From Haplodiscus bocki (taxonomy: Eukaryota), in contig OZ296650.1 of assembly GCA_965655095.1 (NCBI GenBank), forward strand, positions 50,654,001-50,718,000: a stretch of 64,000 bases of DNA. The letters are read 5' to 3'. The translations under genes and the position numbers were made by a program. A model generated the notes under the pieces. The model was not told the DNA's origin, made no database searches, and saw nothing but the letters and a program-made list of their open reading frames with translations. The stretch's first letter is position 1. Each line of letters opens with the position of its first letter. This document shows, in pieces, positions 19,370-62,887 of this stretch.

Positions 19370-19377
19370 GATTAGAT

Positions 19378-19842: not shown

Positions 19843-19870
19843 TTACACATCGAAAGGGGTATCTAATATT

Positions 19871-20268: not shown

Positions 20269-20282
20269 CTACCCTCCTTTTT
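20269..20282 (-). promoter_or_regulatory. Candidate polypurine tract
   Basis: Minus strand AAAAAGGAGGGTAG directly abutting the candidate LTR, downstream of env. Confidence 0.5.
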
Positions 20283-23799: not shown

Positions 23800-24585
23800 G
23801 TGTCTGGATTTCACTTCAGTTGGAATGTCAATAAAACTTTTAGTAACTCTTGGGAAAAAACAGTGTGGAAAACTTTCAAGCCCCGATAATAAGTACGCAG
23901 GAAAACTGACTGCTTCTTCATTCATTCTAGAAGAGCTGATCAAAATGTAAGTGTCCGAAGCGTTAACGCTCAATAAATGGATTGTATTGTATCATATGGG
24001 CCCTGGTTTACTGCAGGACATATTGACACACGTGGGGATGACAGTATCACTCATGCAACCTATGGGGGAAAACTGTGTTTCCTGCTAAGCGCGAAAAGTC
24101 AGCGCGGTGGCTGGGGTCGCATTTTACCTCCTTGAAGGCATTGGTGAACTGTCTATCAAAAGCTTCGTCAAAAGAATTGAGGCATAAAGTCCGAATCGAC
24201 ATACCGAATCCTTCATCACAAAGGATTCAACCGGCCTTAAGATCGTATGCTGTGATCACTTTATCCCCCGGGCCTGCGTTTATTTTTGCTTTTGAAGGAT
24301 ATTGAACTCACGACAACAGGAGACAGCAATTTTTGTCATATTAATCAACTGGCGACGATCGAAACAGAAGGAAAGTGCGTTTGAAAAACGTATGTCAGAA
24401 AACTCAAGAAGAAACTGCTGTGGCAGAGCAACTGGAATGCATACAGTTTGATGAACAACCCACCAAGACATTTCCCAGGCCACGGTCTATTTGCATTCCA
24501 AAAACACAACAAAAATTGCTTGCTGTGAGTCTTTTTAGGAAAAAACTGCAACAAAAACGCGGACTGAAAAAAGGTCAGTATAGGT
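23800..24585 (+). pseudogene. JmjC-domain 2-oxoglutarate/Fe(II) dioxygenase relic (KDM2/KDM7-like), antisense to gag-pol-env
   Basis: From 23977: MDCIVSYGPWFTAGHIDTRGDDSITHATYGGK, with the same T-x2-H-x-D-x8-H-x3-GGK spacing as KDM2A [22 protein letters not shown]; after a frameshift, QPALRSYAVIT matches IPSGWIHAVYT. Confidence 0.75.
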
Positions 24586-34030: not shown

Positions 34031-35026
34031 CAAAAATCCTACTTTTTGATTTGTTTGGATTTCTCTAACAACAACTATACTTCGAAGCAAGGACTCAAAG
34101 TCAGTTCAGTTGTCCCTTTTAAACCCTTCGTATTTTGGAAAAAAAGTTACTTGACTGCGCGAGCGCTGCCGTTTCACTTGTATCTGGTGGGCGAGAAAAG
34201 TTGAAATGATGGAATCCTAATGAACTGAATCAGTTTCAGAAGCTTATGAGTGAGAGTAAACGAAAAATCACTACTACTGTCTTATGATCAATTTAGGCCA
34301 TGAAGTGCTCTCAATGAAATCTGCGGTTTAAAGAAGAATGGTGAAAACAATCTTTTCGAGAACATTGGGAGCGCAAATATGAATTTTCTGCATCTACATT
34401 AGACCTAGGTTAGGATTAAGAAAAGGGCCAACAAAAAATGCGGTTTTCTTCATTCTAGGATTAGAGTTGCTCCAGCTAGGTGTCTTCTTCTGCTAGGTTA
34501 GCCTTTCGTGTAGAGGGTTTAGGGTTTTCTTTGCATGGCAAGATCGCGCTGCCCCCCTTGTACTCTTTAGAGCGCCCATTGTATCCGGATGTCTTGACCG
34601 GTTGCTGGTCTTCAGTCTGTAGCTTGTCGTCACTCCTGAACCGTCACCATCCGCTGTTTGTAATTCTAGTTCTAGATTGCGTCGTTTATGCCAGAGAAGG
34701 TTTCTAGTATCTTCTGACCTTTGCGGTAGAGTATGATTCTGATGGATGCGAGGTGCCCCGGATTAAACTTTTTACAAGCTTCAAATCAACAGCTCGCCTA
34801 GAGAACAGAGATATGTTTGTCAAAATAAGTCAATTTTTTTGAGAGCGTTTAAATCTGATTGTCTCAGATATTAAAGAGTCAAGATTATTTCAAAAATTAA
34901 TGTTAAAACTATTGATGAGCGAGTGTATCTTATCTGAATGTTAGCGCTGTTTAGATTCCCGGAAGGCAAAATTTGAAGTTTAGTTCAAATTCGCTTGGAA
35001 GATCAATTTTGACGTGTATTGCGTTA

Positions 35027-36654
35027 TTAGTTTTTTGACTGCGAGTTGAGCAGGACTGGCCCCCCTCTTAATCTGCTTCTGCCTCTTGTTTCATATTGTT
35101 CTGATGCGTGATTAGAGTAACCACACGAAAACCAAACCTTTTGTGAAAATGCTGTTGTCTCAGTGTGTCCTTTCGGATGTGCTGTGGTTAATGACCTTTC
35201 AGAACAGTGATTATTATAAATTGAAGGGTTTTATGTCTGTTGTCATCGTTTGAATAATTTCTACGATAGTTCCCTTGTAATTGTCTCTTCTATTTATATT
35301 TTTTCTGTGAAAGTTTCCTCTGAAACTGTTTCCGTACCTTCCCTGAGGTTGAATTTGGTTCTGTGGCTGACCAGTTTTTCCAGTCAAGGCGTTAAGTCTT
35401 TTTTCAGGAGATTTTTGATATTCTGTCTTTTTGGTCAAGACTGCTGGGAGTTTTTCGGAGTTGTCTATACTCATTCCTATAAATTTGTCTTTAGACCAGT
35501 CATCTGTTGGGCATAACTCTCGAAAATCATTTTTTCTCTGGCTTCTGTGCGCGCTTCTTGGATTGTGGTAGCTTTCGGTTTCTGCAAACTTTGATTCGTG
35601 TAAAACTTGGCATTCTTTTTTCGAACAACCTAATTTTGTGTCACTCTCGTTCCATTTGAGCAAAGTTTCTCCTATGAAACTTTCCAGTCGTTTTTGGGTC
35701 AAATATGTCTTTGTCACCTGCTGCAGTACCATCAACCGGTGCTGATCTACAGGTGTTGGCTAAGCTTTCATCGATAAATTTTGGAGTTTTACCAAAAGTT
35801 CTACAGGAGACTCTGTTTTGTGGTTCAATTTCGTGTTTTCTATGTTCATGTGATGAAATTCCCTCGAACTTTGGTGTTAAAAACAGTTTTCCAATGCTGC
35901 GATTGTTAATTCTAAGTCTGCTCTTGTGTTTGCATATAATGTTAGGAAAAAATGTAATGCTGAATGTTTCAAAGGAAGTTCCAAGAACAAAGTATCTTAC
36001 TTTTTGATTTGCTTGGGTTCTTGTAACATCAACTATACTTCGAAACAAGGACTCAAAGTCAGTGCAATTGTCCAATATAAACCCTTCGCATTTTCGAAGA
36101 AAAACATTTGACTACGCGTGCGCTGCCCTTTTAGTTGGATCTCCTTCGCGAGAAATGTCGAAATGATGAAGTTCAAATGAAGTGATTCAGTTTCAGAAAG
36201 TTATGAGTAAGAGTAAACGAAAAATCACTAGTATTGCCTTATGATCAATTTAGGCCATCAGGCGCCCTCATTGAAATCTGTGAATCTGTGGCTTGAATAT
36301 GAATGATGAAAATAATGTTTTTGAGAACAATCGGAGGGCAAATATCAATTTACTGCATCTAAAATAGGCTCGAGTTAGGATTAAGAAAAGGACCAACGGA
36401 AAAGGGGGGTTGCTGTTTTCTTCATTCTAGGATTAGAGTTGTTCCAGTTAGCTTTTTTCTTCTGCTGGTCAGAATTTTCGTCTGGAGTGTTTAGGGTTGT
36501 CTTTGTATGGCAAGACCGCGCTGTCTCTCCTTTACTATTTAGATCAACCAGTGGATCCAGACATCTTGAGCGGCTGCTGGTCTTCATTTTGTAGCTTGAC
36601 GTCACTCCCGGAACATCACCTTCCAAGATTTGTCATTCTACTTCTAGTTTGCAT
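35027..36654 (-). pseudogene. Representative gag copy in the array (13 such full copies)
   Basis: Stitching frames gives MQTRSR..., TDFESLFRSIVDV..QANQKV, LKDSALQFF...ADLELTIAALENHF (capsid-like; clearest in neighbouring copies), RELCPTDDWS, RG/N-rich QGRYGNSFRGNF, degenerate CCHC knuckle (xCGYSN), and ends SQSKN*. Confidence 0.85.
35030..35036 (-). promoter_or_regulatory. -1 ribosomal frameshift slippery heptamer A AAA AAC at the gag stop
   Basis: TCA AAA AAC TAA in the correct X XXY YYZ phase; intact here and at ~60712-60718, mutated in most other units. Confidence 0.55.
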
Positions 36655-39600
36655 CGTTTATGCTAGAGAAGGTTTCTAGTATCTTCTAAGCTTTCCGGTA
36701 GAGTTTGTTTCTATGGATGCGAGGTCCCCTCGATTTGACTTTTTACATGTTTCAACTCAACAGCTCTTCTTGAGAACAGAGAATTGGTTAGTCAAAATAG
36801 GTCAATTTTTTTAGACAGCGTTCAAAGATGGCTGCGTCAGATTTTAATGAGTCTAGATTATTTTAAAAGTTAATGTCTAAAATACTGATCAGCGAGAGTA
36901 GTTTATTTTAATATTAGCGCCGTTGAGATTCCCGAAAGTGAAAAGTTCAAATTTAGCTGTTATTTGCTTTGAAGATGAAATTTGACGTGTGCGGCGTTTT
37001 TAGCTTTTTGACTGCGAGTTGAACGGGACTGGTCCAGCTCGTGATCTGCTTCTGCCCCTTGTTTCACATTTTTTTGATGCGCGATTGGAGTAACCACATG
37101 AATCGAAAACTTTTTGTGAAAATGCCCCTGTCTCAGTGTGTCCTTCCGACTTTCCTGTGTTTAAAGTCCTCTCAGAACTTCGCCTACCAAAACGTTGAAC
37201 AATATTATGTCCGTTGTCATTGTTTGAATAAATTCCACAAATTGGTTTCTCTGTAAATGTCTCCTCTATTTTTATTTTTTCATTGAAAGTTTCCTCTGAA
37301 ACTGTTCCGTATCTTCCTTGATTTTGATTTTGTTTCTGTGGCTGACCAATATTCCAGTCAATGCGTTAATTCTATTTTCCTGAGATTTTTTAACTCTGCT
37401 GTTGTTTTGTTCAGGACCGCTGCGTTTTTTTCAGAGTTTCTTTACCCATTTCAATAAATCTGTCTTTAGGCCAGTCATCTTTTGGGCATCCCTTTCTCAA
37501 AAAAAAACATTTTCCCTAACTTGTGCACGCTTTTCGGATTGTGGAATTCTCGAGTTCTGCAAAATTTTAATTCGTGTAGAAAATGGCATTGTTTTTCTGA
37601 ACAATCTATTTATGTGTTGCTGTCGTTACATTTGAGCAAACTTTCTCCTTCTAACATTGTCTGTCAGTTCTCGATCAAACTTGTCTTTGTCACCTGTTAC
37701 AGTACCATCAGCCGGTGCTGAGCTACTGCTGATCTACTGGTGCTGGATAAAATTCCATCGCTTTATTTTGGAATTTTACCAAACCTGCTACTGGAGATTC
37801 AGTTTTTTTGTTCAATTTCCTGTTTTCAAAGTTGAAAGAGTGAATTTCCCTCAAACTTCGATGGAAAAAAAGGGTTTCCAATGCCGCAATTGTTAAGTCT
37901 AAGTCTGCTCTTGCGTTTGCATATAATGTGAGGAAGAACTGTAAAGCCGAATCTTTCAAAAGAAGTTTCAAGAATCAAGAATCCTACTTTTTGATTTGCT
38001 TGGATTCCTGTAACCTCCACTATACTTCGAAACAAAGACTCAAAGTCAGTGCAGTTGGCAGTTGTCCAATATAAACCCTTCGCATTTTGGAAGAAAAAAT
38101 TTTGACAGCACGCGCGCTGCCGTTTCACTTGGATCTGTTTCGCAAGGAATGTTGAAATGATGAATTTCTAATGAAGTGGTTCAGTTTCAGAAGGCTATGA
38201 GTGAGAGTAAACGAAAAATCACTACTACTGCCTTATGATCAATTTAGGCCAACAAGCGCTCTCAATAAAATCTGTGGTTTATAGATGAATGGTGAATACA
38301 ATCTTTTCGGGAACAATCGGGGGCAAATATTAATTTTCTGCATGTAAATTAGGCTTAGGTTAGGATTAAGAGAAAGACCACCAGAAAAAGAGAATTGCGG
38401 TTTCCTTCATTCTAGGATTACAGTTGTTCCAGTTAGCTCTCTTCTTCTGCTGGTCAGAATTTTTGTCTAGAGGTTTTAGGGTTGTCTTTGTATGGAAAGA
38501 CCGCGCTGTATCTCCTATACTGTTTAGATCAACCAGTGGATCCAGACGTCTTGAGCGGCTGCAGGTCTCCATTGTGTAGCTTGTTGTCACTCCCAAACCA
38601 TCACCTTCCAATGTTTGTACATCTACTTCTAGTTTGCATCGTTTATGCCAGAGAAGGTTTCTAGTAACTTCTAAGCTTTCCGGTAGAGTATGTTTCTATG
38701 GATGCGATGTCCCTTCGATTGAACTTTTTACAAATTTCAACTCAACAGCTCGCCTTGAGAACAGAGAATTGGTTAGTCAAAAAAGGTCAATTTTTTTAGA
38801 CAGCGTTCAAAGATGGCTGCGTCAGATTTTAATGAGTCTAGATTTTTTTAAAAGTTAATGTCTAAAATTTTGATCAGCGAGAGTAGTTTAATTTAAAATT
38901 AGCGCCGTTGAGATTCCCGAAATTGAAAAGTTCAAGTTAGGTTGATATTTGCTTTGAAGATAAATTTTGATTTGTGTGGCGTTTTTAGTTTTTGACTGCG
39001 AGTTGAACGGGACTGGTCCACCTCGTGATCTGCTTCTGCCTCTTGTTTCGCATTTTTTTGATGCGCGATTAGAGTAACCACATGAACAGAAAAACCTTTT
39101 GCGAAAATGCTGCTGTCTCAGTGTGTTCTTCCGCCTTTCCTGTGTTTATTGTCTTTTCAGAACTTCGCTTATCAAAACTTCGAAAAATATTATGTCTGTT
39201 GTCATGGTTTGAATAATTTCCACGATTATTCTCTCTGTAATTGTCTCCTCTCTTTTTAGTTTTTCCTTGAAAGTTTCGTCTGAAACAGTTTCCGTACCTT
39301 CCTTGATTTTGATTTTGTTTCTGTGGCTGACCAATATTCCAGTCAATGCGTTAATTCTATTTTCCTGAGATTTTTCAACTCTGCTGTTGTTTTGTTCAGG
39401 ACCGCTGGGATTTTTCAGAGTTGTCTTTACCCATCTCAAAAAATCTGTCTTTAGGCCAGTCATCTTTTGGGCATCCCTTTCTCAAAAAATATTTTCCCTT
39501 ATTTTTGTGCACGCTTTTCGGATTGTGGAATTCTCGAGTTCTGCAAAATTTTAATTCGTGTAGAAAATGGCATTGTTTTTCTGAACAATCTATTTATGAG

Positions 39601-42600
39601 TTACTGTCGTTACATTTGAGCAAACTTTCTCCTTCTAACATTGTCTGTCGTTTCTCAATCAAACTTGTCTTTGTCACCTGCTACAGTACCATCAACCGGT
39701 GCTCAGCTACTGCTGATTTACTGGTGCTGGATAAAATTCCATCGCTTTATTTTGGAATTTTACCAAACCTGCTACTGGAGATTCAGTTTTTTTGTTCAAT
39801 TTCCTGTTTTCAAAGTTGAAAGAGTGAATTTCCCTCAAACTTCGATGGAAAAAAAGGGTTTCCAATGCCGCAATTGTTAAGTCTAAGTCTGCTCTTGCGT
39901 TTGCATATAATGTGAGGAAGAACTGTAAAGCCGAATCTTTCAAAAGAAGTTTCAAGAATCAAGAATCCTACTTTTTGATTTGCTTGGATTCCTGTAACCT
40001 CCACTATACTTCGAAACAAAGACTCAAAGTCAGTGCAGTTGGCAGTTGTCCAATATAAACCCTTCGCATTTTGGAAGAAAAAATTTTGACAGCACGTGCG
40101 CTGCCGTTTCACTTGGATCTGTTTCGCAAGGAATGTTGAAATGATGAATTTCTAATGAAGTGGTTCAGTTTCAGAAGGCTATGAGTGAGAGTAAACGAAA
40201 AATCACTACTACTGCCTTATGATCAATTTAGGCCAACAAGCGCTCTCAATAAAATCTGTGGTTTATAGATGAATGGTGAATACAATCTTTTCGGGAACAA
40301 TCGGGGGCAAATATTAATTTTCTGCATGTAAATTAGGCTTAGGTTAGGATTAAGAGAAAGACCACCAGAAAAAGAGAATTGCGGTTTCCTTCATTCTAGG
40401 ATTACAGTTGTTCCAGTTAGCTCTCTTCTTCTGCTGGTCAGAATTTTTGTCTAGAGGTTTTAGGGTTGTCTTTGTATGGAAAGACCGCGCTGTATCTCCT
40501 ATACTGTTTAGATCAACCAGTGGATCCAGACGTCTTGAGCGGCTGCAGGTCTCCATTGTGTAGCTTGTTGTCACTCCCAAACCATCACCTTCCAATGTTT
40601 GTACATCTACTTCTAGTTTGCATCGTTTATGCCAGAGAAGGTTTCTAGTAACTTCTAAGCTTTCCGGTAGAGTATGTTTCTATGGATGCGATGTCCCTTC
40701 GATTGAACTTTTTACAAATTTCAACTCAACAGCTCGCCTTGAGAACAGAGAATTGGTTAGTCAAAAAAGGTCAATTTTTTTAGACAGCGTTCAAAGATGG
40801 CTGCGTCAGATTTTAATGAGTCTAGATTTTTTTAAAAGTTAATGTCTAAAATTTTGATCAGCGAGAGTAGTTTAATTTAAAATTAGCGCCGTTGAGATTC
40901 CCGAAATTGAAAAGTTCAAGTTAGGTTGATATTTGCTTTGAAGATAAATTTTGATTTGTGTGGCGTTTTTAGTTTTTGACTGCGAGTTGAACGGGACTGG
41001 TCCACCTCGTGATCTGCTTCTGCCTCTTGTTTCGCATTTTTTTGATGCGCGATTAGAGTAACCACATGAACAGAAAAACCTTTTGCGAAAATGCTGCTGT
41101 CTCAGTGTGTTCTTCCGCCTTTCCTGTGTTTATTGTCTTTTCAGAACTTCGCTTATCAAAACTTTGAAAAATATTATGTCTGTTGTCATTGTCTGAATAA
41201 TTTCCACGATTATTCTCTCTGTAATTGTCTCCTCTCTTTTTAGTTTTTCCTTGAAAGTTTCGTCTGAAACAGTTTCCGTACCTTCCTTGATTTTGATTTT
41301 GTTTCTGTGGCTGACCAATATTCCAGTCAATGCGTTAATTCTATTTTCCTGAGATTTTTCAACTCTGCTGTTGTTTTGTTCAGGACCGCTGGGATTTTTC
41401 AGAGTTGTCTTTACCCATCTCAAAAAATCTGTCTTTAGGCCAGTCATCTTTTGGGCATCCCTTTCTCAAAAAATATTTTCCCTTATTTTTGTGCACGCTT
41501 TTCGGATTGTGGAATTCTCGAGTTCTGCAAAATTTTAATTCGTGTAGAAAATGGCATTGTTTTTCTGAACAATCTATTTATGAGTTACTGTCGTTACATT
41601 TGAGCAAACTTTCTCCTTCTAACATTGTCTGTCGTTTCTCAATCAAACTTGTCTTTGTCACCTGCTACAGTACCATCAACCGGTGCTCAGCTACTGCTGA
41701 TTTACTGGTGCTGGATAAAATTCCATCGCTATATTTTGGAATTTCACCAAACCTGCTACAGGAGATTCAGTTTTTTTGTTCAATTTCCTGTTTTCAAAGT
41801 TGAAAGAGTGAATTTCCCTCAAACTTCGATGGAAAAAAAGGGTTTCCAATGCCGCAATTGTTAAGTCTAAGTCTGCTCTTGCGTTTGCATATAATGTGAG
41901 GAAGAACTGTAAAGCCGAATCTTTCAAAAGAAGTTTCAAGAATCAAGAATCCTACTTTTTGATTTGCTTGGATTCCTGTAACCTCCACTATACTTCGAAA
42001 CAAAGACTCAAAGTCAGTGCAGTTGGCAGTTGTCCAATATAAACCCTTCGCATTTTGGAAGAAAAAATTTTGACAGCACGTGCGCTGCCGTTTCACTTGG
42101 ATCTGTTTCGCAAGGAATGTTGAAATGATGAATTTCTAATGAAGTGGTTCAGTTTCAGAAGGCTATGAGTGAGAGTAAACGAAAAATCACTACTACTGCC
42201 TTATGATCAATTTAGGCCAACAAGCGCTCTCAATAAAATCTGTGGTTTATAGATGAATGGTGAATACAATCTTTTCGGGAACAATCGGGGGCAAATATTA
42301 ATTTTCTGCATGTAAATTAGGCTTAGGTTAGGATTAAGAGAAAGACCACCAGAAAAAGAGAATTGCGGTTTCCTTCATTCTAGGATTACAGTTGTTCCAG
42401 TTAGCTCTCTTCTTCTGCTGGTCAGAATTTTTGTCTAGAGGTTTTAGGGTTGTCTTTGTATGGAAAGACCGCGCTGTATCTCCTATACTGTTTAGATCAA
42501 CCAGTGGATCCAGACGTCTTGAGCGGCTGCAGGTCTCCATTGTGTAGCTTGTTGTCACTCCCAAACCATCACCTTCCAATGTTTGTACATCTACTTCTAG

Positions 42601-45600
42601 TTTGCATCGTTTATGCCAGAGAAGGTTTCTAGTAACTTCTAAGCTTTCCGGTAGAGTATGTTTCTATGGATGCGATGTCCCTTCGATTGAACTTTTTACA
42701 AATTTCAACTCAACAGCTCGCCTTGAGAACAGAGAATTGGTTAGTCAAAAAAGGTCAATTTTTTTAGACAGCGTTCAAAGATGGCTGCGTCAGATTTTAA
42801 TGAGTCTAGATTTTTTTAAAAGTTAATGTCTAAAATTTTGATCAGCGAGAGTAGTTTAATTTAAAATTAGCGCCGTTGAGATTCCCGAAATTGAAAAGTT
42901 CAAGTTAGGTTGATATTTGCTTTGAAGATAAATTTTGATTTGTGTGGCGTTTTTAGTTTTTGACTGCGAGTTGAACGGGACTGGTCCACCTCGTGATCTG
43001 CTTCTGCCTCTTGTTTCGCATTTTTTTGATGCGCGATTAGAGTAACCACATGAACAGAAAAACCTTTTGCGAAAATGCTGCTGCCTCAGTGTGTTCTTCC
43101 GCCTTTCCTGTGTTTATTGTCTTTTCAGAACTTCGCTTATCAAAACTTCGAAAAATATTATGTCTGTTGTCATTGTTTGAATAATTTCCACGATTATTCT
43201 CTCTGTAATTGTCTCCTCTCTTTTTAGTTTTTCCTTGAAAGTTTCGTCTGAAACAGTTTCCGTACCTTCCTTGATTTTGATTTTGTTTCTGTGGCTGACC
43301 AATATTCCAGTCAATGCGTTAATTCTATTTTCCTGAGATTTTTCAACTCTGCTGTTGTTTTGTTCAGGACCGCTGGGATTTTTCAGAGTTGTCTTTACCC
43401 ATCTCAAAAAATCTGTCTTTAGGCCAGTCATCTTTTGGGCATCCCTTTCTCAAAAAATATTTTCCCTTATTTTTGTGCACGCTTTTCGGATTGTGGAATT
43501 CTCGAGTTCTGCAAAATTTTAATTCGTGTAGAAAATGGCATTGTTTTTCTGAACAATCTATTTATGAGTTACTGTCGTTACATTTGAGCAAACTTTCTCC
43601 TTCTAACATTGTCTGTCGTTTCTCAATCAAACTTGTCTTTGTCACCTGCTACAGTACCATCAACCGGTGCTCAGCTACTGCTGATTTACTGGTGCTGGAT
43701 AAAATTCCATCGCTATATTTTGGAATTTCACCAAACCTGCTACAGGAGATTCAGTTTTTTTGTTCAATTTGCTGTCTTCTAAGCTGATATAATGACTTTC
43801 CCTCAAATTTCTTTGGAAAAAATGGTTTTCCATTGCTACGATTGTTAAGTCTAAGTCTGCTCTTGCGTTTGCATAAAATTTGAGGAAAAATTGTAACGCC
43901 GACTCCTCCAAAAGAAGTTTCGAGAATAGAGAATCCTACTTTTTGATTTGCTTGGACACCTGGAACATCAACTATACTTCAAAACAAGGACTCAAAGTCA
44001 GTGCAGTTGTCCAATATGAACTTCGCATTTTAGAATAAAATCTTTTGACTGCCCGTGCGCTGTGTTTTACTTGTATCTGCTTGGCGAGAATTAGTGAAAT
44101 GATGAAATCCTAATGAACTGATTCAGTTTCAGAAAGTTATGAGTGAGAGTAAACGAAAAATCACTATTACTGCCTTATGATCAGTTCAGGCCATGAAGCG
44201 CTCTCAATGAAGTCTGTGGTTTATAGATGAATGGTGAATACATTCTTTTCGGGAACAATCGGGGGCAAATATTAATTTTCTGCATGTAAATTAGGCTTAG
44301 GTTAGGATTAAGAAAAGGGCCAACGAAAAAAATTGCGGTTTTCTCCATTCTAGGATTAGAGTTGCTCCAGCTAGGTGCCTTCTTCTGCTAGGTAGGCTTT
44401 TTGTGTAGAGGGTTTAGGGTTGTCTTTGCATGACATGATCGCGCTGCCCCTCTTATACTGTTTAGATCACCCAGTGTATCCAGACGTCTTGAGCGGCTGC
44501 TGGTCTTCACTGTGTAGCTTGTCGTCACTCCCCAACCGTCACGATCCATTGTTTGTACTTCTAGTTCTAGTTTGCTTCGTTTATGCCAGAGAAGGTCTCT
44601 AGTAACTTCTGAACTTTCCGGTAGAGTATGTTTCTGATGGATTCGAGGTCCCCTCGATTGGACTTTTTACAAGTTTCAGCTCAACAGCTGTTCTTGAGAA
44701 TAGAGAATTGGTTAGTCAAAATAGGTCACCTTTTTTCGAGAGCGTTCAAACCTGGCTGTGTCAGATAATAAAGATTCTAGATTACTTTATATAATAAATG
44801 TCCAAACTATTGATCCGCGAGAGTAGTTTCTCTCAAAGAGAACGCCATTTAGATTCTCGAAGGTGAGAACAATAAGTTTAGTTCATATTTGCTTTCAAGA
44901 CAAATTTTGACGTGTGTGGCGGTAATAGTTCTTTGACTGCGAGTTGAACGGGACTGCTCCACCTCGTGATCTGCTTCTGCCTCTTGTTTCACATTTTTGT
45001 GATGCGCGGTTAGAGTAACCACATGAAAAGAAAACCGTTTGTGAAAAAGCTGTTGTTTCTGTCTGGCCATCCTCATTTCCTGTGCCTAAAGTCCTTTCAG
45101 AACTTTAATTATCATAACTTCGAAAAATATTATGTCTGTTGTCATTGTTTGAAAAAGTTCCACAATTGTTCCCTCTGTAATTGTCTCCTCTATTTATATT
45201 TTTTCATCGTAGGTTTCCTCTGAAGTTGTTTCTGTTTCTTCTTTGATTTTGGTTTTGGTTCTGTGGCTGACCAATTTTGCCAGTCAGTGCGTTAATTCAA
45301 TTTCCAGGGCTTTTTTATACTCTGTCTTTTTGGTCAGGACCGCTGGGAGTATTTTGGAGTTGTTTGTACTCATTTCATTGAATCTGATTTTAAAGCATTC
45401 ATCTATTGGGCGAAACTCCTTCAAAATGGTTTTTTGATTTTTTCTCTAGGTTTTGTGCAGGCTTCATGGATTGTAGCAGTTTTCGATTTGTGTGAAGTTT
45501 TCATTCGTGTAAAAAATGGCTTTGTTTTTCTGAACAATCTAATTTTGTGTCACTCTCGTTCCATTTGAGCAAAGTTTCTCCTATTAACGTTTTCAGTCGT

Positions 45601-51600: not shown

Positions 51601-54600
51601 ATTTTGGGGTTTTGCCAGAAGTTTTACAGGAGACTCGGTTTTGTGGTTCAATTTCGTGTTTTCTATGTTCATATGATGAAGTTCCCTCAAACTTTGGTGG
51701 TAAAAATGGTTTTCCAATGCTGCGATTGTTAATTCTAAGTCTGTTCTTGTGTTTGCATATAATGTGAGGGAAAACTGTAATGCTGAATCTTTCAAAAGAA
51801 GTTTCAAGAATGATGAATCTTACTTTTTGATTTGCTTGGACTCCTGGAACATCAAATATACTTCGAAACAAGGACTCAAAGTCAGTGCAGTTGTCCAATA
51901 TGAACTTCGCATTTTGGAAGAAAAATTTCTGACTGCGCGTGGGCTGCCGTTTTACTTGGATCTGTTTCGCGAGAAATGTTGAAATGATGAAATTCTAATG
52001 AAGTGATTCATTTTCAGAAAGTTATGACTGAGAGTAAACGAAAAATCAATACTACTGCCTTATAATCAATTTAGGCCATCAAGCGCTCTCAATGAAATGT
52101 AAGAATCTGTGGTTTAAAGATGAATGATGAAAATAATCTTTTTGAGAACAATCGGAGAGCAAATATGAATTTTCTGCATCTAAACTAGGATTAGGTTAGG
52201 ATTAAGAAAAGGACAAACAAAAAAATAGAATTGCGGTTTTCTGCATTCTAGGATTAGAGTTGCTCCAGTTAGGTGTCTTCTTCTGCTGGCTAGAACTTTC
52301 GTCTAGAGGGTTTAGAGTTGTCTTTGTATGGCAAGATAGCGCTGTCTCTCCTATACTGTTTAGCTCGCCCATTGTGTCCAGACGTATTGAGCGGTTGCTG
52401 GTCTTCAGGGTGTAGCTTGTCGTCACTCCTGAACCGTCACCATCCTAGGTTTGTACTTCTACTTCTAGTTTGCATCGTTTATGCCAAAGAAGGTTTCTAG
52501 TATCTTCTAAGCTTTCCGGTAGAGTTTGTTTCTATGGATGCGAGGTCCCCTCGATTGGACTTTTTACAAGTTTCAACTCGACAGCTGTTCTTGAGAATAG
52601 AGAATTGGTTAGTCAAAATAGGTCAACTTTTTTTCGAAAGCGTTGAAACCTGGTTGTGTCAGATAATAAGGAATCTAAATTACTTTATATAAAAAATGTC
52701 CAAACTATTGTTCCGCGAGAGTAGTTTCTCTCAAAAATAACGCCATTTAGAATCTCGAAGGTGAAAACAATAGGTTTGGTTCATATTTGCTTTGAAGATA
52801 AATTTTGACGTTTGTGGCAGTATTAGTTCTTTGACTGCGAGTTGAACGGGACTGCTCCACCTCGTGATCTGCTTCTGCCTCTTGTTTCACACTTTTGTGA
52901 TGCGCGGTTAGAGTAACCACATGAAAAGAAAACCGTTTGTGAAAATGCTGTTGTCTCTGTGTGGCCATCCGCATTTCCTGTGTTTAATGTCCTTTCAGTA
53001 CTTTAATTATCATAACGTTGAAAAATATTATGTCTGTTGTCATTCTTCGAAAAATTTCCACAATTGTTCCCTCTGTAATTGTCTCCTCTATACGTATTTT
53101 TTCTTTGAAAACTTCCTCTGAAATTGTTTCCGTACCTTCCGTGATTTTGATTTTGGTTCTGTGGCTGACCAATTTTGCCAGTCAATGCGTTAAGTCTATT
53201 TTCCGGAGATTTTTGATATTCTGTCTTTTTGGTCAAGACTGCTGGGAGTTTTTCGGAGTTGTCTATACACAATCCTTTAAATCTGTCTTTAGACCAGTCA
53301 TCTGTTGGGCATAACTCTCTGAAAATGACTTTTTCTCTAGCTTCTGTGCGCGCCTCTTGGATTGTGACAGCTTTCGGTTTCTGCAAACTTTAATTCGTGT
53401 AAAGATTGGCATTTTGTTTCTGAACAATCTAATTTTGTGTCACTCTCGTTCCATTTGAGCAAAGTTTCTCCTATTAACCTTTTCAGTCGTTTCTTGATCA
53501 AATATGTCTTTGTCACCTGCTACAGGACCAGCAACCGGTGTTGATCTACAGGAGTTGGATAAGCTTTCGTCGCTAAATTTTGGGGTTTTGCCAAAAGTTT
53601 TACAGGAGACTCGGTTTTGTGGTTCAATTTCGTGTTTTCTATGTTCATATGATGAAATTCCCTCAAACTTTGGTGGTAAAAATGGTTTTCCAATGCTGCG
53701 ATTGTTAACTCTAAGTCTGCTCTTGTGTTTGCATATAATGTGAGGAAAAACTGTAATGCTGAATTTTTCAAAAGAAGTTTCAAGAATAAACAATCCTACT
53801 TTTTGATTTGTTTGGTTTCCTGTAATATCAACTATACTTCGAAACAAGGACTCAAAGTCAGTGAAGTTTTCCGTCATAAACCCTTCGTATTTTGGAAAAA
53901 AACTTTTGACTGCGCGTGCACTGCCGTTTTTCTTGTATCTGGTTGGCGAGAATTGTTGAAATGATGAAATCCTAATGAACTGATTCAGTTTCAGAAGGTT
54001 ATGAGTGAGAGTAAACGAAAAATCACTACTACTGCCTTATGATCAGTTTAGGCCATGAAGCGCTCTCAATGAAGTCTGTGGTTTTTAGATGAATGGTGAA
54101 AACAATCCTTTTGAGAACAATCGGAGGGTAAATATGAAATTTCTGCATCTGAATTAGGCTGAGGTTAGGATTAAGAAAAGGGCCAACAAAAGAGAATTGC
54201 AGTTTTCTGCATTCTAGGATTAGAGTAGCTCCAGTTAGGTGTCTTCTTCTGCTGGTTAGAACTTTCGTCTAGAGGGTTTAGAGTTGTCTTTGTATGGCAA
54301 GATAGCGCTGTCTCTCCTATACTATTTAGCTCGCCCATTGTGTCCAGACGTATTGAGCGGTTGCTGGTCTTCAGTGTGTAGCTTGTCGTCACTCCTGAAC
54401 CGTCACCATCCGTTGTTTGTTCTTCTAGTTCTAGCTTGCTTCGTTTATGCCCGAGAAGGTTTCTAGTATCTTCTAAGCTTTCCGGTAGAGTTTGTTTCTA
54501 TGGATGCGAGGTCCCCTCGATTGGACTTTTTACAAGTTTCAACTCGACAGCTGTTCTTGAGAATAGAGAATTGGTTAGTCAAAATAGGTCACCTTTCTTT

Positions 54601-57600
54601 CAAGAGCGTTCAAACCTGGTTGTGTCAGATATTAAAGAGTCTAGATTATTTTAAAAATTAGTGTTTAAACTATTGGTAAGCGAGAGTAGTTTATCTTAAA
54701 ATTAGCGCCGTTTAGATTCCCGAAAAAGAAAAGAATAAGTTTAGTTCATATTTGCTTCTAAGATAAATTTTGACGTTTGTGGCGGTATTAGTTCTTTGAC
54801 TGCGAGTTGAACGGGACTGCTCCACCTCGTGATCTGCTTCTGCCTCTTGTTTCACTTTTTTTGATGCGCGGTTAGACTAACCACTTGAATAGAAAACCGT
54901 TCGTGAAAATGCTGTTGTCTCTGTGTGGCTATCCGCATTTCCTGTGTTTAATGTACTTTTAGTACTTTAATTATCATAACGTTGAAAAATATTATGTCTG
55001 TTGTCATTCTTCGAAAAAATTCTACAATTGTTCCCTCTGTAATTGTCTCCTCTAGTCGTATTTTTTTCCTTGAAAACTTCCTCTGAAATTGTTTCCGTAC
55101 CTTCCGTGATTTTGATTTTGGTTCTGTGGCTGACCAATTTTGCCAGTCAATGCGTTAAGTCTATTTTCCGGAGATTTTTGATATTCTGTCTTTTTGGTCA
55201 AGACTGCTGGGAGTTTTTCGGAGTTGTCTATACTCATTCCTTTAAATCTGTCTTTAGACCAGTCATCTGTTGGGCATAACTCTCTGAAAATGACTTTTTC
55301 TCTAGCTTCTGTGCACGCCTCTTGGATTGTGACAGCTTTCAGTTTCTGCAAACTTTAATTCGTGTAAAAATTGGCATTGTTTTTCCGAACAATCTAATTT
55401 TGTGTCACTCTCGTTCCATTTGAGCAAAATTTCTCCTATTAACCTTTTCAGTCGTTTCTTGATCAAATATGTCTTTGTCACCTGCTACAAGACCATCAAC
55501 CGGTGTTGATCTACAGGAGTTGGATAAGCTTTCGTCGCTAAATTTTGGGGTTTTGCCAGAAGTTTTACAGGAGACTCGGTTTTGTGGTTCAATTTCGTGT
55601 TTTCTATGTCCATATGATGAAGTTCCCTCAAACTTTGGTGGTAAAAATGGTTTTCCAATGCTGCGATTGTTAATTCTAAGTCTGTTCTTGTGTTTGCATA
55701 TAATGTGAGGGAAAACTGTAATGCTGAATCTTTCAAAAGAAGTTTCAAGAATGATGAATCTTACTTTTTGATTTGCTTGGACTCCTGGAACATCAAATAT
55801 ACTTCGAAACAAGGACTCAAAGTCAGTGCAGTTGTCCAATATGAACTTCGCATTTTGGAAGAAAAATTTCTGACTGCGCGTGGGCTGCCGTTTTACTTGG
55901 ATCTGTTTCGCGAGAAATGTTGAAATGATGAAATTCTAATGAAGTGATTCAGTTTCAGAAAGTTATGACTGAGAGTAAACGAAAAATCAATACTACTGCC
56001 TTATAATCAATTTAGGCCATCAAGCGCTCTCAATGAAATGTAAGAATCTGTGGTTTAAAGATGAATGATGAAAATAATCTTTTTGAGAACAATCGGAGAG
56101 CAAATATGAATTTTCTGCATCTAAACTAGGATTAGGTTAGGATTAAGAAAAGGACAAACAAAAAAATAGAATTGCGGTTTTCTGCATTCTAGGATTAGAG
56201 TTGCTCCAGTTAGGTGTCTTCTTCTGCTGGCTAGAACTTTCGTCTAGAGGGTTTAGAGTTGTCTTTGTATGGCAAGATAGCGCTGTCTCTCCTATACTGT
56301 TTAGCTCGCCCATTGTGTCCAGACGTATTGAGCGGTTGCTGGTCTTCAGGGTGTAGCTTGTCGTCACTCCTGAACCGTCACCATCCTAGGTTTGTACTTC
56401 TACTTCTAGTTTGCATCGTTTATGCCAAAGAAGGTTTCTAGTATCTTCTAAGCTTTCCGGTAGAGTTTGTTTCTATGGATGCGAGGTCCCCTCGATTGGA
56501 CTTTTTACAAGTTTCAACTCGACAGCTGTTCTTGAGAATAGAGAATTGGTTAGTCAAAATAGGTCAACTTTTTTTCGAAAGCGTTGAAACCTGGTTGTGT
56601 CAGATAATAAGGAATCTAAATTACTTTATATAAAAAATGTCCAAACTATTGTTCCGCGAGAGTAGTTTCTCTCAAAAATAACGCCATTTAGAATCTCGAA
56701 GGTGAAAACAATAGGTTTGGTTCATATTTGCTTTGAAGATAAATTTTGACGTTTGTGGCAGTATTAGTTCTTTGACTGCGAGTTGAACGGGACTGCTCCA
56801 CCTCGTGATCTGCTTCTGCCTCTTGTTTCACACTTTTGTGATGCGCGGTTAGAGTAACCACATGAAAAGAAAACCGTTTGTGAAAATGCTGTTGTCTCTG
56901 TGTGGCCATCCGCATTTCCTGTGTTTAATGTCCTTTCAGTACTTTAATTATCATAACGTTGAAAAATATTATGTCTGTTGTCATTCTTCGAAAAATTTCC
57001 ACAATTGTTCCCTCTGTAATTGTCTCCTCTATACGTATTTTTTCTTTGAAAACTTCCTCTGAAATTATTTCCGTACCTTCCGTGATTTTGATTTTGGTTC
57101 TGTGGCTGACCAATTTTGCCAGTCAATGCGTTAAGTCTATTTTCCGGAGATTTTTGATATTCTGTCTTTTTGGTCAAGACTGCTGGGAGTTTTTCGGAGT
57201 TGTCTATACTCAATCCTTTAAATCTGTCTTTAGACCAGTCATCTGTTGGGCATAACTCTCTGAAAATGACTTTTTCTCTAGCTTCTGTGCGCGCCTCTTG
57301 GATTGTGACAGCTTTCGGTTTCTGCAAACTTTAATTCGTGTAAAGATTGGCATTTTGTTTCTGAACAATCTAATTTTGTGTCACTCTCGTTCCATTTGAG
57401 CAAAGTTTCTCCTATAAACCCTTTCAGTCGTTCCTTGATCAAATATGTCTTTGTCACCTGCTACAGGACCATCAACCGGTGTTGATCTACAGGAGTTGGA
57501 TAAGTTTCCGTCGCTAAGTTTTGGGGTTTTGCCAAAAGTTTTACAGGAAACTCGGTTTTGTGGTTCAATTTCGTGTTTTCTATGTCCATATGATGAAATT

Positions 57601-60600
57601 CCCTCAAACTTTGGTGGTAAAAATGGTTTTCCAATGCTGCGATTGTTAACTCTAAGTCTGCTCTTGTGTTTGCATATAATGTGAGGAAAAACTGTAATGC
57701 TGAATCTTTCAAAAGAAGTTTCAAGAATAAACAATCCTACTTTTTGATTTGTTTGGTTTCCTGTAATATCAACTATACTTCGAAACAAGGACTCAAAGTC
57801 AGTGAAGTTTTCCGTCATAAACCCTTCGTATTTTGGAAAAAAACTTTTGACTGCGCGTGCACTGCCGTTTTTCTTGTATCTGGTTGGCGAGAATTGTTGA
57901 AATGATGAAATCCTAATGAACTGATTCAGTTTCAGAAGGTTATGAGTGAGAGTAAACGAAAAATCACTACTACTGCCTTATGATCAGTTTAGGCCATGAA
58001 GCGCTCTCAATGAAGTCTGTGGTTTTTAGATGAATGGTGAAAACAATCCTTTTGAGAACAATCGGAGGGTAAATATGAAATTTCTGCATCTGAATTAGGC
58101 TGAGGTTAGGATTAAGAAAAGGGCCAACAAAAGAGAATTGCAGTTTTCTGCATTCTAGGATTAGAGTAGCTCCAGTTAGGTGTCTTCTTCTGCTGGTTAG
58201 AACTTTCGTCTAGAGGGTTTAGAGTTGTCTTTGTATGGCAAGATAGCGCTGTCTCTCCTATACTATTTAGCTCGCCCATTGTGTCCAGACGTATTGAGCG
58301 GTTGCTGGTCTTCAGTGTGTAGCTTGTCGTCACTCCTGAACCGTCACCATCCGTTGTTTGTTCTTCTAGTTCTAGCTTGCTTCGTTTATGCCCGAGAAGG
58401 TTTCTAGTATCTTCTGAACTTTCCGGTAGAGTATGTTTTTGATGGATGCGAGGTCCCCTCGATTGGACTTTTTACAAGTTCCAACTCAACAGCTCGTCTT
58501 GAAAACAAAGAATTATTTAGTCAAAATAATTCACACTTTTTCGAGATCGTTCAAACTTGGTTGTGTCAGATAACAAAGATTCTATATTATTTTATAAAAT
58601 AAATGTCTAAACTATTGATCAGCGAGAGTAGTTTCTCTCAAAAATAGCGCCATTTAGATCCTCGAAGGTGAAAACAATAAGTTTAGTTCATATTTGCTTT
58701 GAAGACAAATTTTGACATGTGTGGCGGTAATAGTTCTTTGACTGCGAGTTGAACGGGACTGCTCCACCTCGTGATCTGCTTCTGCCTCTTGTTTCACACT
58801 TTTGTGATGCGCGGTTAGAGTAACCACATGAAAAGAAAACCGTTTGTGAAAATGCTGTTGTCTCTGTGTGGCCATCCGCATTTCCTGTGTTTAATGTCCT
58901 TTCATTACTTTAATTATCATAACGTTGAAAAATATTATGTCTGTTGTCATTGTTTGAAAAAGTTCCACAATTGTTCCCTCTGTAATTGTCTCCTCTATTT
59001 ATATTTTTTCATCGTAGGTTTCCTCCGAAGTTGTTTCTGTTTCTTCCTTGATTTTGGTTTTGGTTCTGTGGCTGACCAATTTTGCCAGTCAGTGCGTTAA
59101 TTCAATTTCCAGGGATTTTTTATACTCTGTCTTTTTGGTCAGGACCGCTGGGAGTATTTTGGAGTTGTTTGTACTCATTTCATTGAATCTGATTTTAAAG
59201 CGTTCATCTATTGGGCAAAACTCCTTCAAAATGATTTTTTGATTTTTCTCTGGGTTTTGTGCAGGCTTCATGGATTGTGGCAGTTTTTGATTTGTGTAAA
59301 AGTTTCATTCGTGTAAAAATTGGCAATAATTTTCTGAACAATCTAATTTTGTGTCACTCTCGTTCCATTTGAGCAAAGTTTCTCCTATTACCCTTTTCAG
59401 TCGTTTCTTGATCAAATATGTCTTTGTCAACTGCTACAGGACCATCAACCGGTGTTGATCTACAGGAGTTGGATAAGCTTTCGTCGCTAAATTTTGGGGT
59501 TTTGCCGAAAGTTTCAAAGGAGACTCGGTTTTGTGTTTCAATTTCGTGTTTTATATGTTCATATGATGATATTCCCTCAAATTTTGGTGGTAAAAATGGT
59601 TTTCCAATACTGCGATTGTTAACTCTAAGTCTGCTCTTGTGTTTGCATATAACGTGAGGAAAAACTGTAATGCTGAATCTTTCAAAAGAAGTTTCAAGAA
59701 TAAAGAATCCTACTTTTTGATTTGCTTGGACTCCTGGAACATCAACTATACTTCGAAACAAGGACTCAAAGTCAGTGCAGTTGTCCAATATGAACTTCGC
59801 ATTTTAGAAGAAAAACTTCTGACTGCGCGTGAACTGCCGTTTCACTTGTATCTGCTTGGCGAGAATTGTTGAATTGATAAAATCCTAATGAACTTATTCA
59901 GTTTCAGAAGGTTATGAGTGAGAGTAAACGAAAAATCACTACTTCTGCCTTATGATCATTTTAGGCCATAAAGCGTTCTCAATGAAATCTAAGAATCTGT
60001 GGTTTAAAGATGAATGATGAAAATAATCTTTTTGAGAACAATCGGAGGGCAAATATGAATTTTCTGAATCTAAACTAGGATTAGGTTAGGATTAAGAAAA
60101 GAACAAACAAAAAAAAGAATTGCGGTTTTCTGCATTCTAGGATTAGAGTTGCTCCAGGCAGGTGTCTCCTTCTGCTGATTAGAACTTTCGTCTAGAGGGT
60201 TTAGGGTTGCCTTTGTATGGCAAGACTGCGCTGTCTCTCCTATATTGTTTAGATCAACCAGTGGATCCATACATCTTGAGCGGCTGCTGGTTTTCATTGT
60301 GTAGCTTGTCGTCACTCCCGAACCGTCACCATCCTAGGTTTGTACTTCTACTTCTAGTTTGCATCGTTTATGCCAGAGAAGGTTTCTAGTATCTTCTAAG
60401 CTTTCCGGTAGAGTTTGTTTCTATGGATGCGAGGTCCCCTCGATTGGACTTTTTACAAGTTTCAACTCAACAGCCCGCCTTGAGAACAGAGAATTGGTTA
60501 GTCAAAATATTTCAACTTTTCCGAGAGCGTTCAAATCTGGTTGTGTCAGATATTAAAGAGTCTAGATTTTTTTAAAAATTAGTGTTTAAACTATTGGTAA

Positions 60601-62047
60601 GCGAGAGTAGTTTATCTTAAAATTAGCGCCGTTTAGATTCTCGAAAGTGAAAAGAATAAGTTTAGTTCATATTTGCTTCTAAGATAAATTTTGATGTGGG
60701 TGGTGGTATTAGTTTTTTGACTGCGACTTGAACGGGACTGGTCCCCCTCGTGATCTGCTTCTGTCTCTTTTTTTTCGGAAACTGTCAGCATTCTCGGACA
60801 ATGAGATCATGAAAAAAGCAGCAGACTTTATATTATTTTTGAGGCCGTTTTCAATCAGGGTTTGTGTGTTTGGGTCTCTACTTAAAGGAACGATAACTAT
60901 GAAAATCTGGTACCGATGAATACCTGTCCGTTGATTCCAAACCAAAATCAGATTGCTGACCAATCAAAAAAGATGTCCAACTAAGATACATCCGGGTGAG
61001 TCCAAAAGAAAAACGGGTCATCGTTTTCATGCAGATATGGGCCCAATTGATTAATTCTTGTACATTTTCTTGAAATTTGACTCTTCGCTGCTGTATTCTT
61101 TTGTTATCGAAACCTGAACGATTTTTTGTCGGGAAGCGTCAGTGATTTAGGCAAAAAATGTCAATTTTCAACGCATTTGCATTGAGTTGGTAACAGTGGG
61201 GGTTGAGAGTGAGGCCAAACATGTGTTTCGTTCACACTTGTAAAACTTTTCTCGGGGGTTAGCATTAGTCCAGCTTTGTTCAACATTTGGACAATAACTA
61301 TCTCCAACTTCATGTGCAGGAAGACAATTGGTGTGGGGGCAACGTAATAAATGAAACTCAAGGCATAGCTTGATCTTAGCATTGTAGGCCCGTAAAACAT
61401 AACCTACTGGCTTTAGAGCCAACCGACCTGTTGGTTGCTTACTTAACATCTTTTATGTTAGCCATCATCAGTGCCTTCACTATTGAGCCTTGAGCGGTAT
61501 AACTGTAAAGATTCGACGTGTTCAATCCTTACCAGCAAACTGTTGCCCAAAGATTCAGGATCATGAATCTCCAATTGGGTTAATCGTAGGTAAAAGAGAG
61601 GCTCGAAGGTTGAGCTTTTTCCGGGATCGGGTACCCTTAAAGGTATCAATTAAATTGATGTCCAAACTGATTAAGCTAGCCGTTTCTGGTTGATCCAAGA
61701 GACGATTCTCGCAGCAGAAACATGGGTATAGATTGCTCTGAGTCTCGTTTGTACTGGGGGAACATTTTTTAACGCCAATGGCAAGGGTTGCACAAAGGCC
61801 GTGGAAAACTGTAAGTAACGGTCTGAGTCAATCGTGGTAGATGTTGGAGGCGGACTACATATTTTTTGGGCGGAACATCCGTCTCCGTGAACAGTCTTGT
61901 GTCGAACGTGGCTGTTTCTACACCTTACAGACATCTAATTGTGATGTTTGCGAGTATGGCCAGGAGTAGGGGTTTCTGAAACTGCAGTCGTGGAGTCTGA
62001 TTGTTGTGATAAACTTATTAAATAGCTTCCGGTCATACGAAAACTTG

Positions 62048-62871: not shown

Positions 62872-62887
62872 AATTGATTAGAGCATT

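What the first reader, a model, noticed from the sequence alone, without database searches (positions are those of the whole stretch)
34031..60768. 27-kb satellite built from an LTR-plus-whole-gag cassette, amplified in place within its parent element
Seen: each ~1.97 kb unit runs from an LTR-like spacer (homologous to 19871-20208) through a complete gag to about 15-20 nt past the gag stop. It excludes pol almost precisely and sits directly upstream of the element's single pol. Established: plant TR-GAG elements and tandem-array TRIMs show LTR-gag or LTR-internal tandem structures, and gag-derived restriction exists (Fv1, Ty1 p22). Inference: this is either a retroelement-born macrosatellite or a promoter-plus-gag array acting as a small-RNA source or decoy against the family. 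The array looks far more homogeneous than the decayed pol, so amplification continued long after the element died.
Basis: partly seen in the sequence, partly recalled or inferred. Interest (0 to 1): 0.8.

Follow-up and report, generated by a model that had tools for sequence, protein, structure and literature searches.

The report
Dead retrotransposon's LTR-gag piece, tandemly amplified
A 2-kb piece of an old, dead Ty3/gypsy-type retrotransposon (most of its LTR, the leader and the whole gag region) was copied head to tail about 14 times where it stood; this is a real and cleanly datable example of a known way that mobile elements seed large tandem repeats, and nothing suggests the copies still make protein.

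Summary
Window 34029-60773 is a tandem array on the element's sense (minus) strand. It holds 13 full units of 1965-1985 bp, one truncated unit and an 81-bp stub. Each unit runs from LTR nucleotide 64 through a PBS-like site, the leader and all of gag to 16 nt past the gag stop. All 14 junctions are identical, so there was one founding event, at a 3-nt microhomology. The junction occurs nowhere else in the 1.5-Gb assembly.

Units are 80-99.9% identical, not uniformly homogeneous. Read-derived contigs bridge the array/pol boundary and show the 1984-bp back-joint, so this is not an assembly artefact.

"Complete gag" is true in extent only. Every unit has at least 4 frameshifts and 2 stops. A 7-nt duplication is shared by all units and absent from 9 dispersed copies. 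Variation within the array is spread evenly over codon positions. A Gag-protein (Fv1/p22-like) role is therefore rejected. A small-RNA role could not be tested because no RNA runs were found.

The best reading is neutral in-place amplification by illegitimate duplication followed by unequal exchange, as for maize CRM1TR/CRM4TR. Earlier notes of this scan list several similar in-place arrays of transposon segments elsewhere in this genome. Interest is low to moderate.

The parts
19870..20268 (-). 3' LTR of the parent element (about 400 bp). It is preceded in sense by a purine-rich tract and followed by non-family flank.
   Evidence: Colinear match to the LTR of family copies. Start and end located.
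20269..34021 (-). Decayed internal region of the parent element downstream of gag. It holds the PR/RT/RNase H/IN remnants (about 29000-34021) and about 9 kb of further family-specific internal sequence.
   Evidence: Colinear at about 70-72% identity with the reference copy C3:10.6 Mb over its positions 6854-19743. Integrase_H2C2 E=7.6e-7 and weak RVT_1 on fragments. No open frame longer than 174 aa.
34029..35010 (-). Truncated last unit (in sense order): LTR nt 64 to gag codon ~47, joined directly to the start of the protease region. About 1.26 kb is missing relative to family copies. The join has a 2-3 nt microhomology.
   Evidence: A read-derived contig spans 33001-34273 without any difference.
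35011..60692 (-). Thirteen full units (N13 to N1) of 1965-1985 bp. Each holds the LTR from nt 64 to its end (about 352 nt), a PBS-like TGG site, a leader of about 480 nt, the gag region (about 1120 nt) and 16 nt past the gag stop.
38969..40952 (-). Example unit N11. LTR part 40952 down to about 40600. PBS-like site about 40589. gag-equivalent 40107 down to 38985 (stop at 38987-38985). 16-nt tail 38984-38969.
60693..60773 (-). 81-bp stub, the last 81 nt of a unit (the end of gag). It is the array's upstream end in sense order.
60774..61993 (.). Flank that is single-copy in the assembly. It shows no remnant of LTR nt 1-63. From about 61994 an unrelated old repeat family begins.

Best explanation
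This is a neutral, retroelement-derived local macrosatellite. An old copy of a roughly 15-kb Ty3/gypsy-type LTR element sits on the minus strand. It suffered one illegitimate, microhomology-mediated (TCA) tandem duplication that joined a point 16 nt past the gag stop to nucleotide 64 of the 5' LTR. The likely route is unequal sister-chromatid exchange or replication template switching. The resulting 2-kb direct repeats then expanded and were partly homogenised by repeated unequal homologous exchange in unit register, including a recent two-unit duplication and a recent triplication. Later deletions trimmed both ends of the array. The gag copies were already broken when amplification began and have since drifted neutrally. 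Shown here: the anatomy, the single founding junction, the single locus, the dead gag and the neutral substitution pattern. Inferred: the recombination mechanism and the absence of function.
For: The junction is identical in 14 places, and a TCA microhomology is seen against 13 family copies. Units form one clade against dispersed copies, with interleaved subclades and near-identical neighbours: N3=N5 99.9%, N2~N4 97.2%, N10=N11 99.7%. A private 7-nt duplication at gag codon ~45 is present in all units and absent in 9 dispersed copies. Every unit has at least 4 frameshifts and at least 2 stops. Variable sites within the array number 140/136/137 at codon positions 1/2/3 (p=0.98), while array versus the related open gag gives 79/84/158 (p=2e-8). 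The array is colinear with pol, the internal region and the 3' LTR of the same family in the same orientation. The junction-spanning 120-mer is found only in this array. Read-derived contigs from 4 runs (2 samples, 1 study) bridge the boundary, carry a 'goes back 1984' joint, and show roughly 3x contig depth on the unit type that the assembly holds three times. The published analogue is CRM1TR/CRM4TR, whose monomers start inside the LTR and end in the internal region and were initiated by illegitimate recombination (PMC3648361).
Against: The array holds a non-integer number of units. The upstream end lacks the first 63 nt of the LTR, and the pol side lacks about 1.26 kb, so the 'in place' reading needs two secondary deletions. 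The 3' LTR is no closer to the unit LTRs (K2P 0.28-0.34) than to other family copies (0.29-0.41), so common descent of the array and the 3' LTR from one insertion is not shown by sequence. One breakpoint falls only 16 nt past the gag stop, a mild coincidence of a few percent by my rough estimate. Absence of function rests on lack of coding constraint only; transcription and small RNAs were not testable.
Confidence: 0.85

Rival explanations
1. The array is a functional locus: a promoter-plus-gag array that acts as a source of piRNA/siRNA, or as a chromatin-nucleating repeat, against the element family.
For: Each unit keeps most of the LTR (nt 64 to the end), so a promoter could be present 14 times. 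The array has persisted and kept duplicating. Maize CRM-derived tandem repeats are reported as transcribed (PMC3648361, section list).
Against: The family is long dead: copies are about 70-75% identical with no open frames, so there is little to defend against. The substitution pattern is neutral. CpG observed/expected is unremarkable (0.79 against 0.72-0.98 nearby). Similar in-place arrays of unrelated transposon segments are noted across this genome, and I saw two more myself, which argues for a general mutational process. No RNA data were available.
Confidence: 0.07
2. The founding junction arose by deletion rather than duplication. Either two adjacent or nested copies of the family were fused, losing everything from the gag end of the first to LTR nt 63 of the second, or an LTR-gag~LTR derivative formed. 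LTR-based unequal exchange then expanded the array (the Sharma et al. model).
For: This model was proposed for CRM1TR/CRM4TR (PMC3648361). It gives the same final layout if the downstream copy kept its pol. The reference family copy carries an LTR-bearing 1535-bp array at its 3' end, so LTR-containing arrays recur in this family.
Against: All units share a private 7-nt duplication and form one clade, which fits descent from one copy more simply, although homogenisation could mimic this. A deletion within a single element would have removed pol, yet pol is present.
Confidence: 0.1
3. The repeats are an assembly artefact: collapsed or inflated repeats, with far fewer units in reality.
For: Units N10/N11/N12 and N3/N5 are 97-99.9% identical, so their exact number could be misjudged.
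Against: Most units differ by 8-20% and so are distinct sequences that an assembler cannot invent. Independent k-mer contigs of 4 runs reproduce U1/U2 variants exactly, bridge the boundary, contain the back-joint, and show about 2.5-3x contig depth for the triplicated type. The tool warns that depth is not a copy number, and the runs may come from the assembled sample.
Confidence: 0.02
4. The array was built off-chromosome from a circular LTR-gag DNA by rolling-circle replication and then reinserted, or it is a TR-GAG-type non-autonomous element array.
For: Both array ends fall at arbitrary phases of the unit, and the upstream flank is unique DNA.
Against: The downstream flank is the same family's pol in the right order and orientation, starting about 170 nt beyond the unit end. 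The junction lacks a polypurine tract and LTR nt 1-63, so the units are not LTR-gag-LTR elements. There is no second locus.
Confidence: 0.03

Closest known systems
CRM1TR / CRM4TR tandem repeats of maize (Sharma, Wolfgruber & Presting 2013, PMC3648361)
   Same: The monomer comes entirely from one Ty3/gypsy element. It starts inside the LTR and ends in the internal region downstream of the LTR. The founding junction arose by illegitimate recombination at very short homology. Growth was local, with locus-specific variants.
   Different: Here the monomer extends through the whole gag (2 kb, against LTR+UTR only). There is a single 27-kb locus with the progenitor's pol still attached. The host is probably an animal (earlier scan notes suggest a coral; not verified by me). 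No centromere link is known.
Rye B-chromosome E3900 satellite and other gag-bearing satellites (as listed in the review PMC9659126)
   Same: A large-monomer tandem repeat that contains a decayed gag-like reading frame of an LTR retrotransposon.
   Different: E3900 is an abundant, chromosome-specific satellite. This array is one small locus, and its unit boundaries can be mapped exactly on the parent element.
Tandem LTR-internal-LTR arrays of Cassandra and Wukong TRIMs (PMC7215508, PMC4528315), and TR-GAG elements
   Same: Alternating LTR and internal (or gag) segments produced or expanded by unequal recombination.
   Different: Those units carry complete LTRs with PBS and PPT, because exchange occurs between whole LTRs of transposed elements. 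Here the LTR lacks its first 63 nt, there is no PPT at the junction, and the junction is one private illegitimate event.
Gag-derived restriction factors (Fv1, Ty1 p22)
   Same: Only the raw material is shared: gag sequence detached from pol.
   Different: Those are intact, expressed, selected reading frames. Every gag copy here is broken and evolves neutrally.

Membership tests
Ty3/gypsy-type LTR retroelement (the parent) | Direct long terminal repeats at both ends | tested here: met
   The reference copy has the about 415-bp repeat at 4537-4955 and again from 20235. Thirteen copies all begin homology at the same LTR start. The window has the 3' copy at 19870-20268, and each unit holds LTR nt 64 to the end.
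Ty3/gypsy-type LTR retroelement (the parent) | PBS next to the 5' LTR and a polypurine tract before the 3' LTR | tested here: inconclusive
   A purine-rich run directly precedes the 3' LTR. A TGG-initiated conserved block lies about 10 nt after the LTR end in the units and family copies. I did not match it to a tRNA.
Ty3/gypsy-type LTR retroelement (the parent) | gag followed by pol in the order PR-RT-RNase H-IN | tested here: met
   A related copy with open frames (L009) gives gag-asp_proteas, RVT_1 (1e-21), RT_RNaseH_2, Integrase_H2C2 and rve in that order. Window fragments give Integrase_H2C2 at 7.6e-7 and weak RVT_1.
Retroelement Gag | Capsid-like domain plus CCHC zinc knuckle, encoded directly upstream of PR | tested here: met
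   Among homologues of the related 427-aa protein, 6 of 11 hit DUF1759, 4 of 11 hit zf-CCHC and 1 hits Retrotrans_gag. Conserved C-C-H-C columns appear in the alignment. The array differs from the related gag mostly at third codon positions, which shows past coding constraint. No fold was predicted.
Satellite / macrosatellite DNA | Head-to-tail units with one recurring junction | tested here: met
   14 identical junctions and unit lengths of 1965-1985 bp.
Satellite / macrosatellite DNA | Abundant or multi-locus family | tested here: not met
   The junction-spanning 120-mer occurs only within this array in the 1.5-Gb assembly. The search scores only the best candidates, so small diverged copies could be missed.
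TR-GAG element / LTR-LTR unequal-exchange array | Units bounded by complete LTRs, with a PPT before each LTR | tested here: not met
   The junction is gag stop + 16 nt joined to LTR nt 64. LTR nt 1-63 and the PPT are absent.
CRM1TR/CRM4TR-type retroelement-derived tandem repeat | Monomer wholly derived from one element, starting inside the LTR and ending in the internal region, with a junction made by illegitimate recombination | tested here: met
   The features of that kind are as described in PMC3648361.
Gag-derived restriction factor (Fv1 / Ty1 p22 type) | Intact gag-derived reading frame under purifying selection | tested here: not met
   Each unit has at least 4 frameshifts and at least 2 stops. 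The start-equivalent codon is not ATG in the 4 units checked. Variation is even over codon positions.
piRNA/siRNA-producing cluster | Small RNAs mapping to the array | not testable with these tools
   The single run search returned no RNA run.

The most novel reading that the evidence does not exclude
The array may be one visible product of a genome-wide, unusually active process that amplifies kb-sized segments of dead mobile elements in place. I saw two further arrays beside copies of this same family, and earlier scan notes list Copia, gypsy, LINE and Maverick cases. Such LTR-bearing arrays might also be transcribed into small RNAs that keep related, still-open family members silent.
Probability: 0.1. 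Interest if true: 0.5.

Novelty: new member of a known kind. Interest (0 to 1): 0.25.

Why it matters
This is a very clean natural record of how a macrosatellite is born from a retrotransposon. The founding breakpoints are mapped to the nucleotide and carry a 3-nt microhomology. The progenitor's pol and 3' LTR are still attached. A private frameshift marks the founder. A unit tree shows old founding followed by recent one-unit and two-unit duplications. That makes it useful as a worked example and for calibrating rates of unequal exchange. It does not reveal a new mechanism or a new function. If the many similar arrays noted in this genome are confirmed, the genome-wide propensity would be the more interesting subject.

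Tried and rejected
1. TRF cannot see periods above 500 bp, so the array was found by self-BLAST instead.

2. Pfam on single broken gag pieces of the units gave nothing. Gag identity had to come from a related open copy and its homologues.

3. I first read the unit as ending a few codons before the gag stop, because the related copy L009 has its own frameshift just before the zinc knuckle.

4. A profile search of solved structures with the gag alignment gave only a marginal nucleocapsid hit (E=0.22). No structure was predicted.

5. I hoped LTR divergence would tie the 3' LTR to the array. It is uninformative because all family copies are about equally diverged.

6. CpG depletion showed nothing distinctive.

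7. The single sequencing-run search found only DNA-like contig sets from one study, so expression could not be examined.

8. The organism was not identified. 'Probably a coral' comes from earlier scan notes and I did not check it.

Full report
**Observation**

Self-comparison of the window shows a single large tandem array at 34029-60773. Its period is about 1975 bp and it holds 13.5 units. TRF could not see it because of its period limit. Pairwise identities among units range from 80% to 99.6-99.9%. The window contains no N. No open reading frame in the array exceeds 173-198 codons.

**Orientation and parent element**

The coding sense is the minus strand. Gag-like and pol-like peptide fragments all read on that strand. 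The genome (1.5 Gb, 6626 contigs) holds many dispersed copies of the same family at about 68-76% identity.

I used one dispersed copy as reference (C3:10.60-10.626 Mb; L004+L005+L008). Its layout is:
- an LTR of about 415 bp;
- a leader and gag;
- a pol-bearing internal region that runs colinear with window 34021 down to about 20300, making an element of about 15 kb;
- the LTR again.

Thirteen fetched copies all begin homology at the same LTR start and run uninterrupted from the LTR through gag into pol. The tandem structure is therefore private to this window.

A related family member with open frames (L009) gives gag (427 aa), then aspartic protease, RVT_1, RT_RNaseH_2, Integrase_H2C2 and rve. 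That is Ty3/gypsy-type order. In the window, pol survives only as fragments (Integrase_H2C2 at 7.6e-7, weak RVT_1).

Six of 11 homologues of the related gag match DUF1759, four match zf-CCHC and one matches Retrotrans_gag.

**Unit anatomy**

Alignment of the 14 junction regions with the LTR start and the gag end of 13 family copies fixes the junction. The sequence runs to 16 nt past the gag stop codon and is then joined to LTR nucleotide 64. The two parental sites share TCA at the breakpoint.

All 14 junctions have the same breakpoints, so there was one founding event. In sense order each unit holds:
- the LTR from nt 64 to its end (about 352 nt);
- a conserved TGG-initiated, PBS-like block;
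- a leader of about 480 nt;
- the whole gag region;
- a 16-nt tail.

I first thought otherwise because L009 carries its own frameshift before the zinc knuckle. The homologue alignment corrected this.

**Array ends**

In sense order the array reads as follows:
- single-copy flank (60774-61993);
- an 81-bp stub, the last 81 nt of a unit (60693-60773);
- 13 full units (60692 down to 35011);
- a truncated unit (35010 down to 34029) that stops at gag codon ~47;
- the start of the protease region at 34021.

Relative to family copies about 1.26 kb is missing at the join between the truncated unit and the protease region. The join shows a 2-3 nt microhomology.

The first 63 nt of a 5' LTR are not present upstream of the array. 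'Amplified in place' is therefore the parsimonious reading, because the array has the same family, order and orientation as pol, the internal region and the 3' LTR at 19870-20268. It does require later trimming at both ends.

**Is it real?**

Most units differ from one another by 8-20%, which an assembler cannot invent. I laid contigs built from the reads of four public runs (two samples, one study) on 33001-39000. They include a piece spanning 33001-34273 with no difference, which bridges the pol/array boundary. They match U1/U2 variants exactly and contain a joint that 'goes back 1984' bases. Per-contig depths on the unit type that the assembly holds three times are roughly 2.5-3 times those on single-copy units. 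The tool warns that depth is not a copy number and that the runs may come from the assembled sample, so this is supportive rather than independent proof.

**Single locus**

A 120-nt probe across the junction matches in full only at the 14 places in this array. Everywhere else only the gag-side half matches. This is a local macrosatellite, not a dispersed satellite family.

**State of gag**

Against the related gag coding sequence, every unit has at least four frame-disrupting indels and at least two in-frame stops. One apparent shared 1-nt change near codon 379 is the related copy's own defect and is not counted. The start-equivalent codon is not ATG in the four units inspected.

A 7-nt tandem duplication at codon ~45 is present in all 13 units and in the truncated unit. 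It is absent from all nine dispersed copies examined. The founder was therefore already out of frame, or the change was spread by homogenisation. In eight units a 7-nt loss about 82 codons downstream restores the frame. This explains the open stretches of up to 198 codons.

Among 1078 aligned sites, positions variable within the array number 140, 136 and 137 at codon positions 1, 2 and 3 (p=0.98). Differences between the array and the related gag number 79, 84 and 158 (p=2e-8). The sequence was once a selected coding gene and has drifted neutrally since amplification. This excludes a Gag-protein decoy or restriction role.

**History**

In a tree with dispersed copies as outgroups, the units form one clade with the truncated edge unit basal. 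Two main subclades are interleaved along the array (N7, N9-N12 against N1-N6, N8). N3 and N5 are 99.9% identical and N2 and N4 are 97.2% identical, which points to a recent two-unit duplication. N10 and N11 are 99.7% identical, with N12 at 97%.

In the LTR part, unit-to-unit K2P distance has a median of 0.14 and a maximum of 0.25. The 3' LTR differs from the units by 0.28-0.34 and from other family copies by 0.29-0.41. Founding is therefore old, close to the age of the insertion, and duplication continued until recently. The 3' LTR comparison cannot by itself prove that the array and the 3' LTR stem from one insertion.

**Mechanism**

The best reading has three steps: a single illegitimate duplication at TCA, then unequal homologous exchange in unit register, then two terminal deletions.

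The alternative is the published CRM1TR/CRM4TR model, in which an internal deletion creates an internal~LTR junction and LTR-based exchange follows (PMC3648361). It would need two adjacent copies, since pol is retained here. I cannot exclude it.

Rolling-circle or TR-GAG origins fit poorly. There is no polypurine tract or LTR start at the junction, there is no second locus, and the same family's pol lies directly downstream.

**Context**

Two other tandem structures turned up beside copies of this family. One is a 1535-bp LTR-containing array (at least 4 units, 96-98% identical) at the 3' end of the reference copy. The other is a 7286-bp triplication at 99.9% identity covering flank, LTR, gag and part of pol at C3:24.82 Mb.

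Earlier notes of this scan on the same genome list further in-place arrays of transposon segments, from Copia pol, gypsy, LINE RT, Maverick and another LTR 5' junction. I did not check those notes. Together they suggest a general mutational tendency of this genome rather than anything specific to gag.

**Comparison with the literature**

Retroelement-derived tandem repeats are well documented. Examples are:
- maize CRM1TR/CRM4TR (LTR+UTR monomers; PMC3648361);
- rye E3900 with a gag-like fragment, and many others listed in the review PMC9659126;
- Cassandra and Wukong LTR-internal arrays (PMC7215508, PMC4528315).

The present case differs in carrying a whole gag and in having its progenitor attached. 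It is a new member of this known kind.

**Not testable here**

Transcription, small RNAs and chromatin could not be examined. CpG observed/expected in the array (0.79) is unremarkable next to its surroundings.

Noticed in passing
L008 (C3:10618001-10626000), positions 20101-26000+ of the joined reference L004+L005+L008: The reference family copy ends in a different tandem array. It has at least 4 units of 1535 bp at 96-98% identity. Each unit contains the family's LTR plus about 1.1 kb that matches nothing else in the element.
   Followed up: partly
L007/L002/L003/L006 (C3:24813001-24853000), joined positions 6784-28639: A 7286-bp segment is present three times in tandem at 99.85-99.9% identity. 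It covers about 3.9 kb of flank plus the LTR, gag and the first part of pol of another family copy. A 200-N gap lies in the fetched region, so an assembly effect is not excluded.
   Followed up: partly
L009:3357-9203 (C3:14492357-14498203): A related family member has much better preserved frames: gag of 427 aa, then PR, RT-RNase H and IN pieces. The genome holds many gag frames of 417-430 codons from this relative. This suggests a younger sister family of the dead one in the window.
   Followed up: partly
window 61994-63150: An unrelated old interspersed repeat of about 1.16 kb, with more than 40 copies at 68-76% identity across the genome, lies just beyond the array's unique flank.
   Followed up: no
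window 22760-28265: The parent element's internal region between pol and the 3' LTR is long (about 9 kb) and colinear with the reference copy. Another first-stage note (s1-423698) reads part of it as an opposite-strand accessory block. I only confirmed that it belongs to the family.
   Followed up: no
window 35011-60692, gag codons ~45 to ~127 of units N1-N6, N8, N13: A 7-nt gain and a 7-nt loss about 82 codons apart cancel each other. The shifted stretch between them stays free of stops, giving open frames of 176-198 codons. Variation is even over codon positions, so I take this as chance.
   Followed up: partly
window 4814-5066 and 9234-9438: Two short tandem repeats (periods 120 and 110 bp, about 2 copies each, 75-77% matches) with related consensus sequences lie in the left flank.
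   Followed up: no
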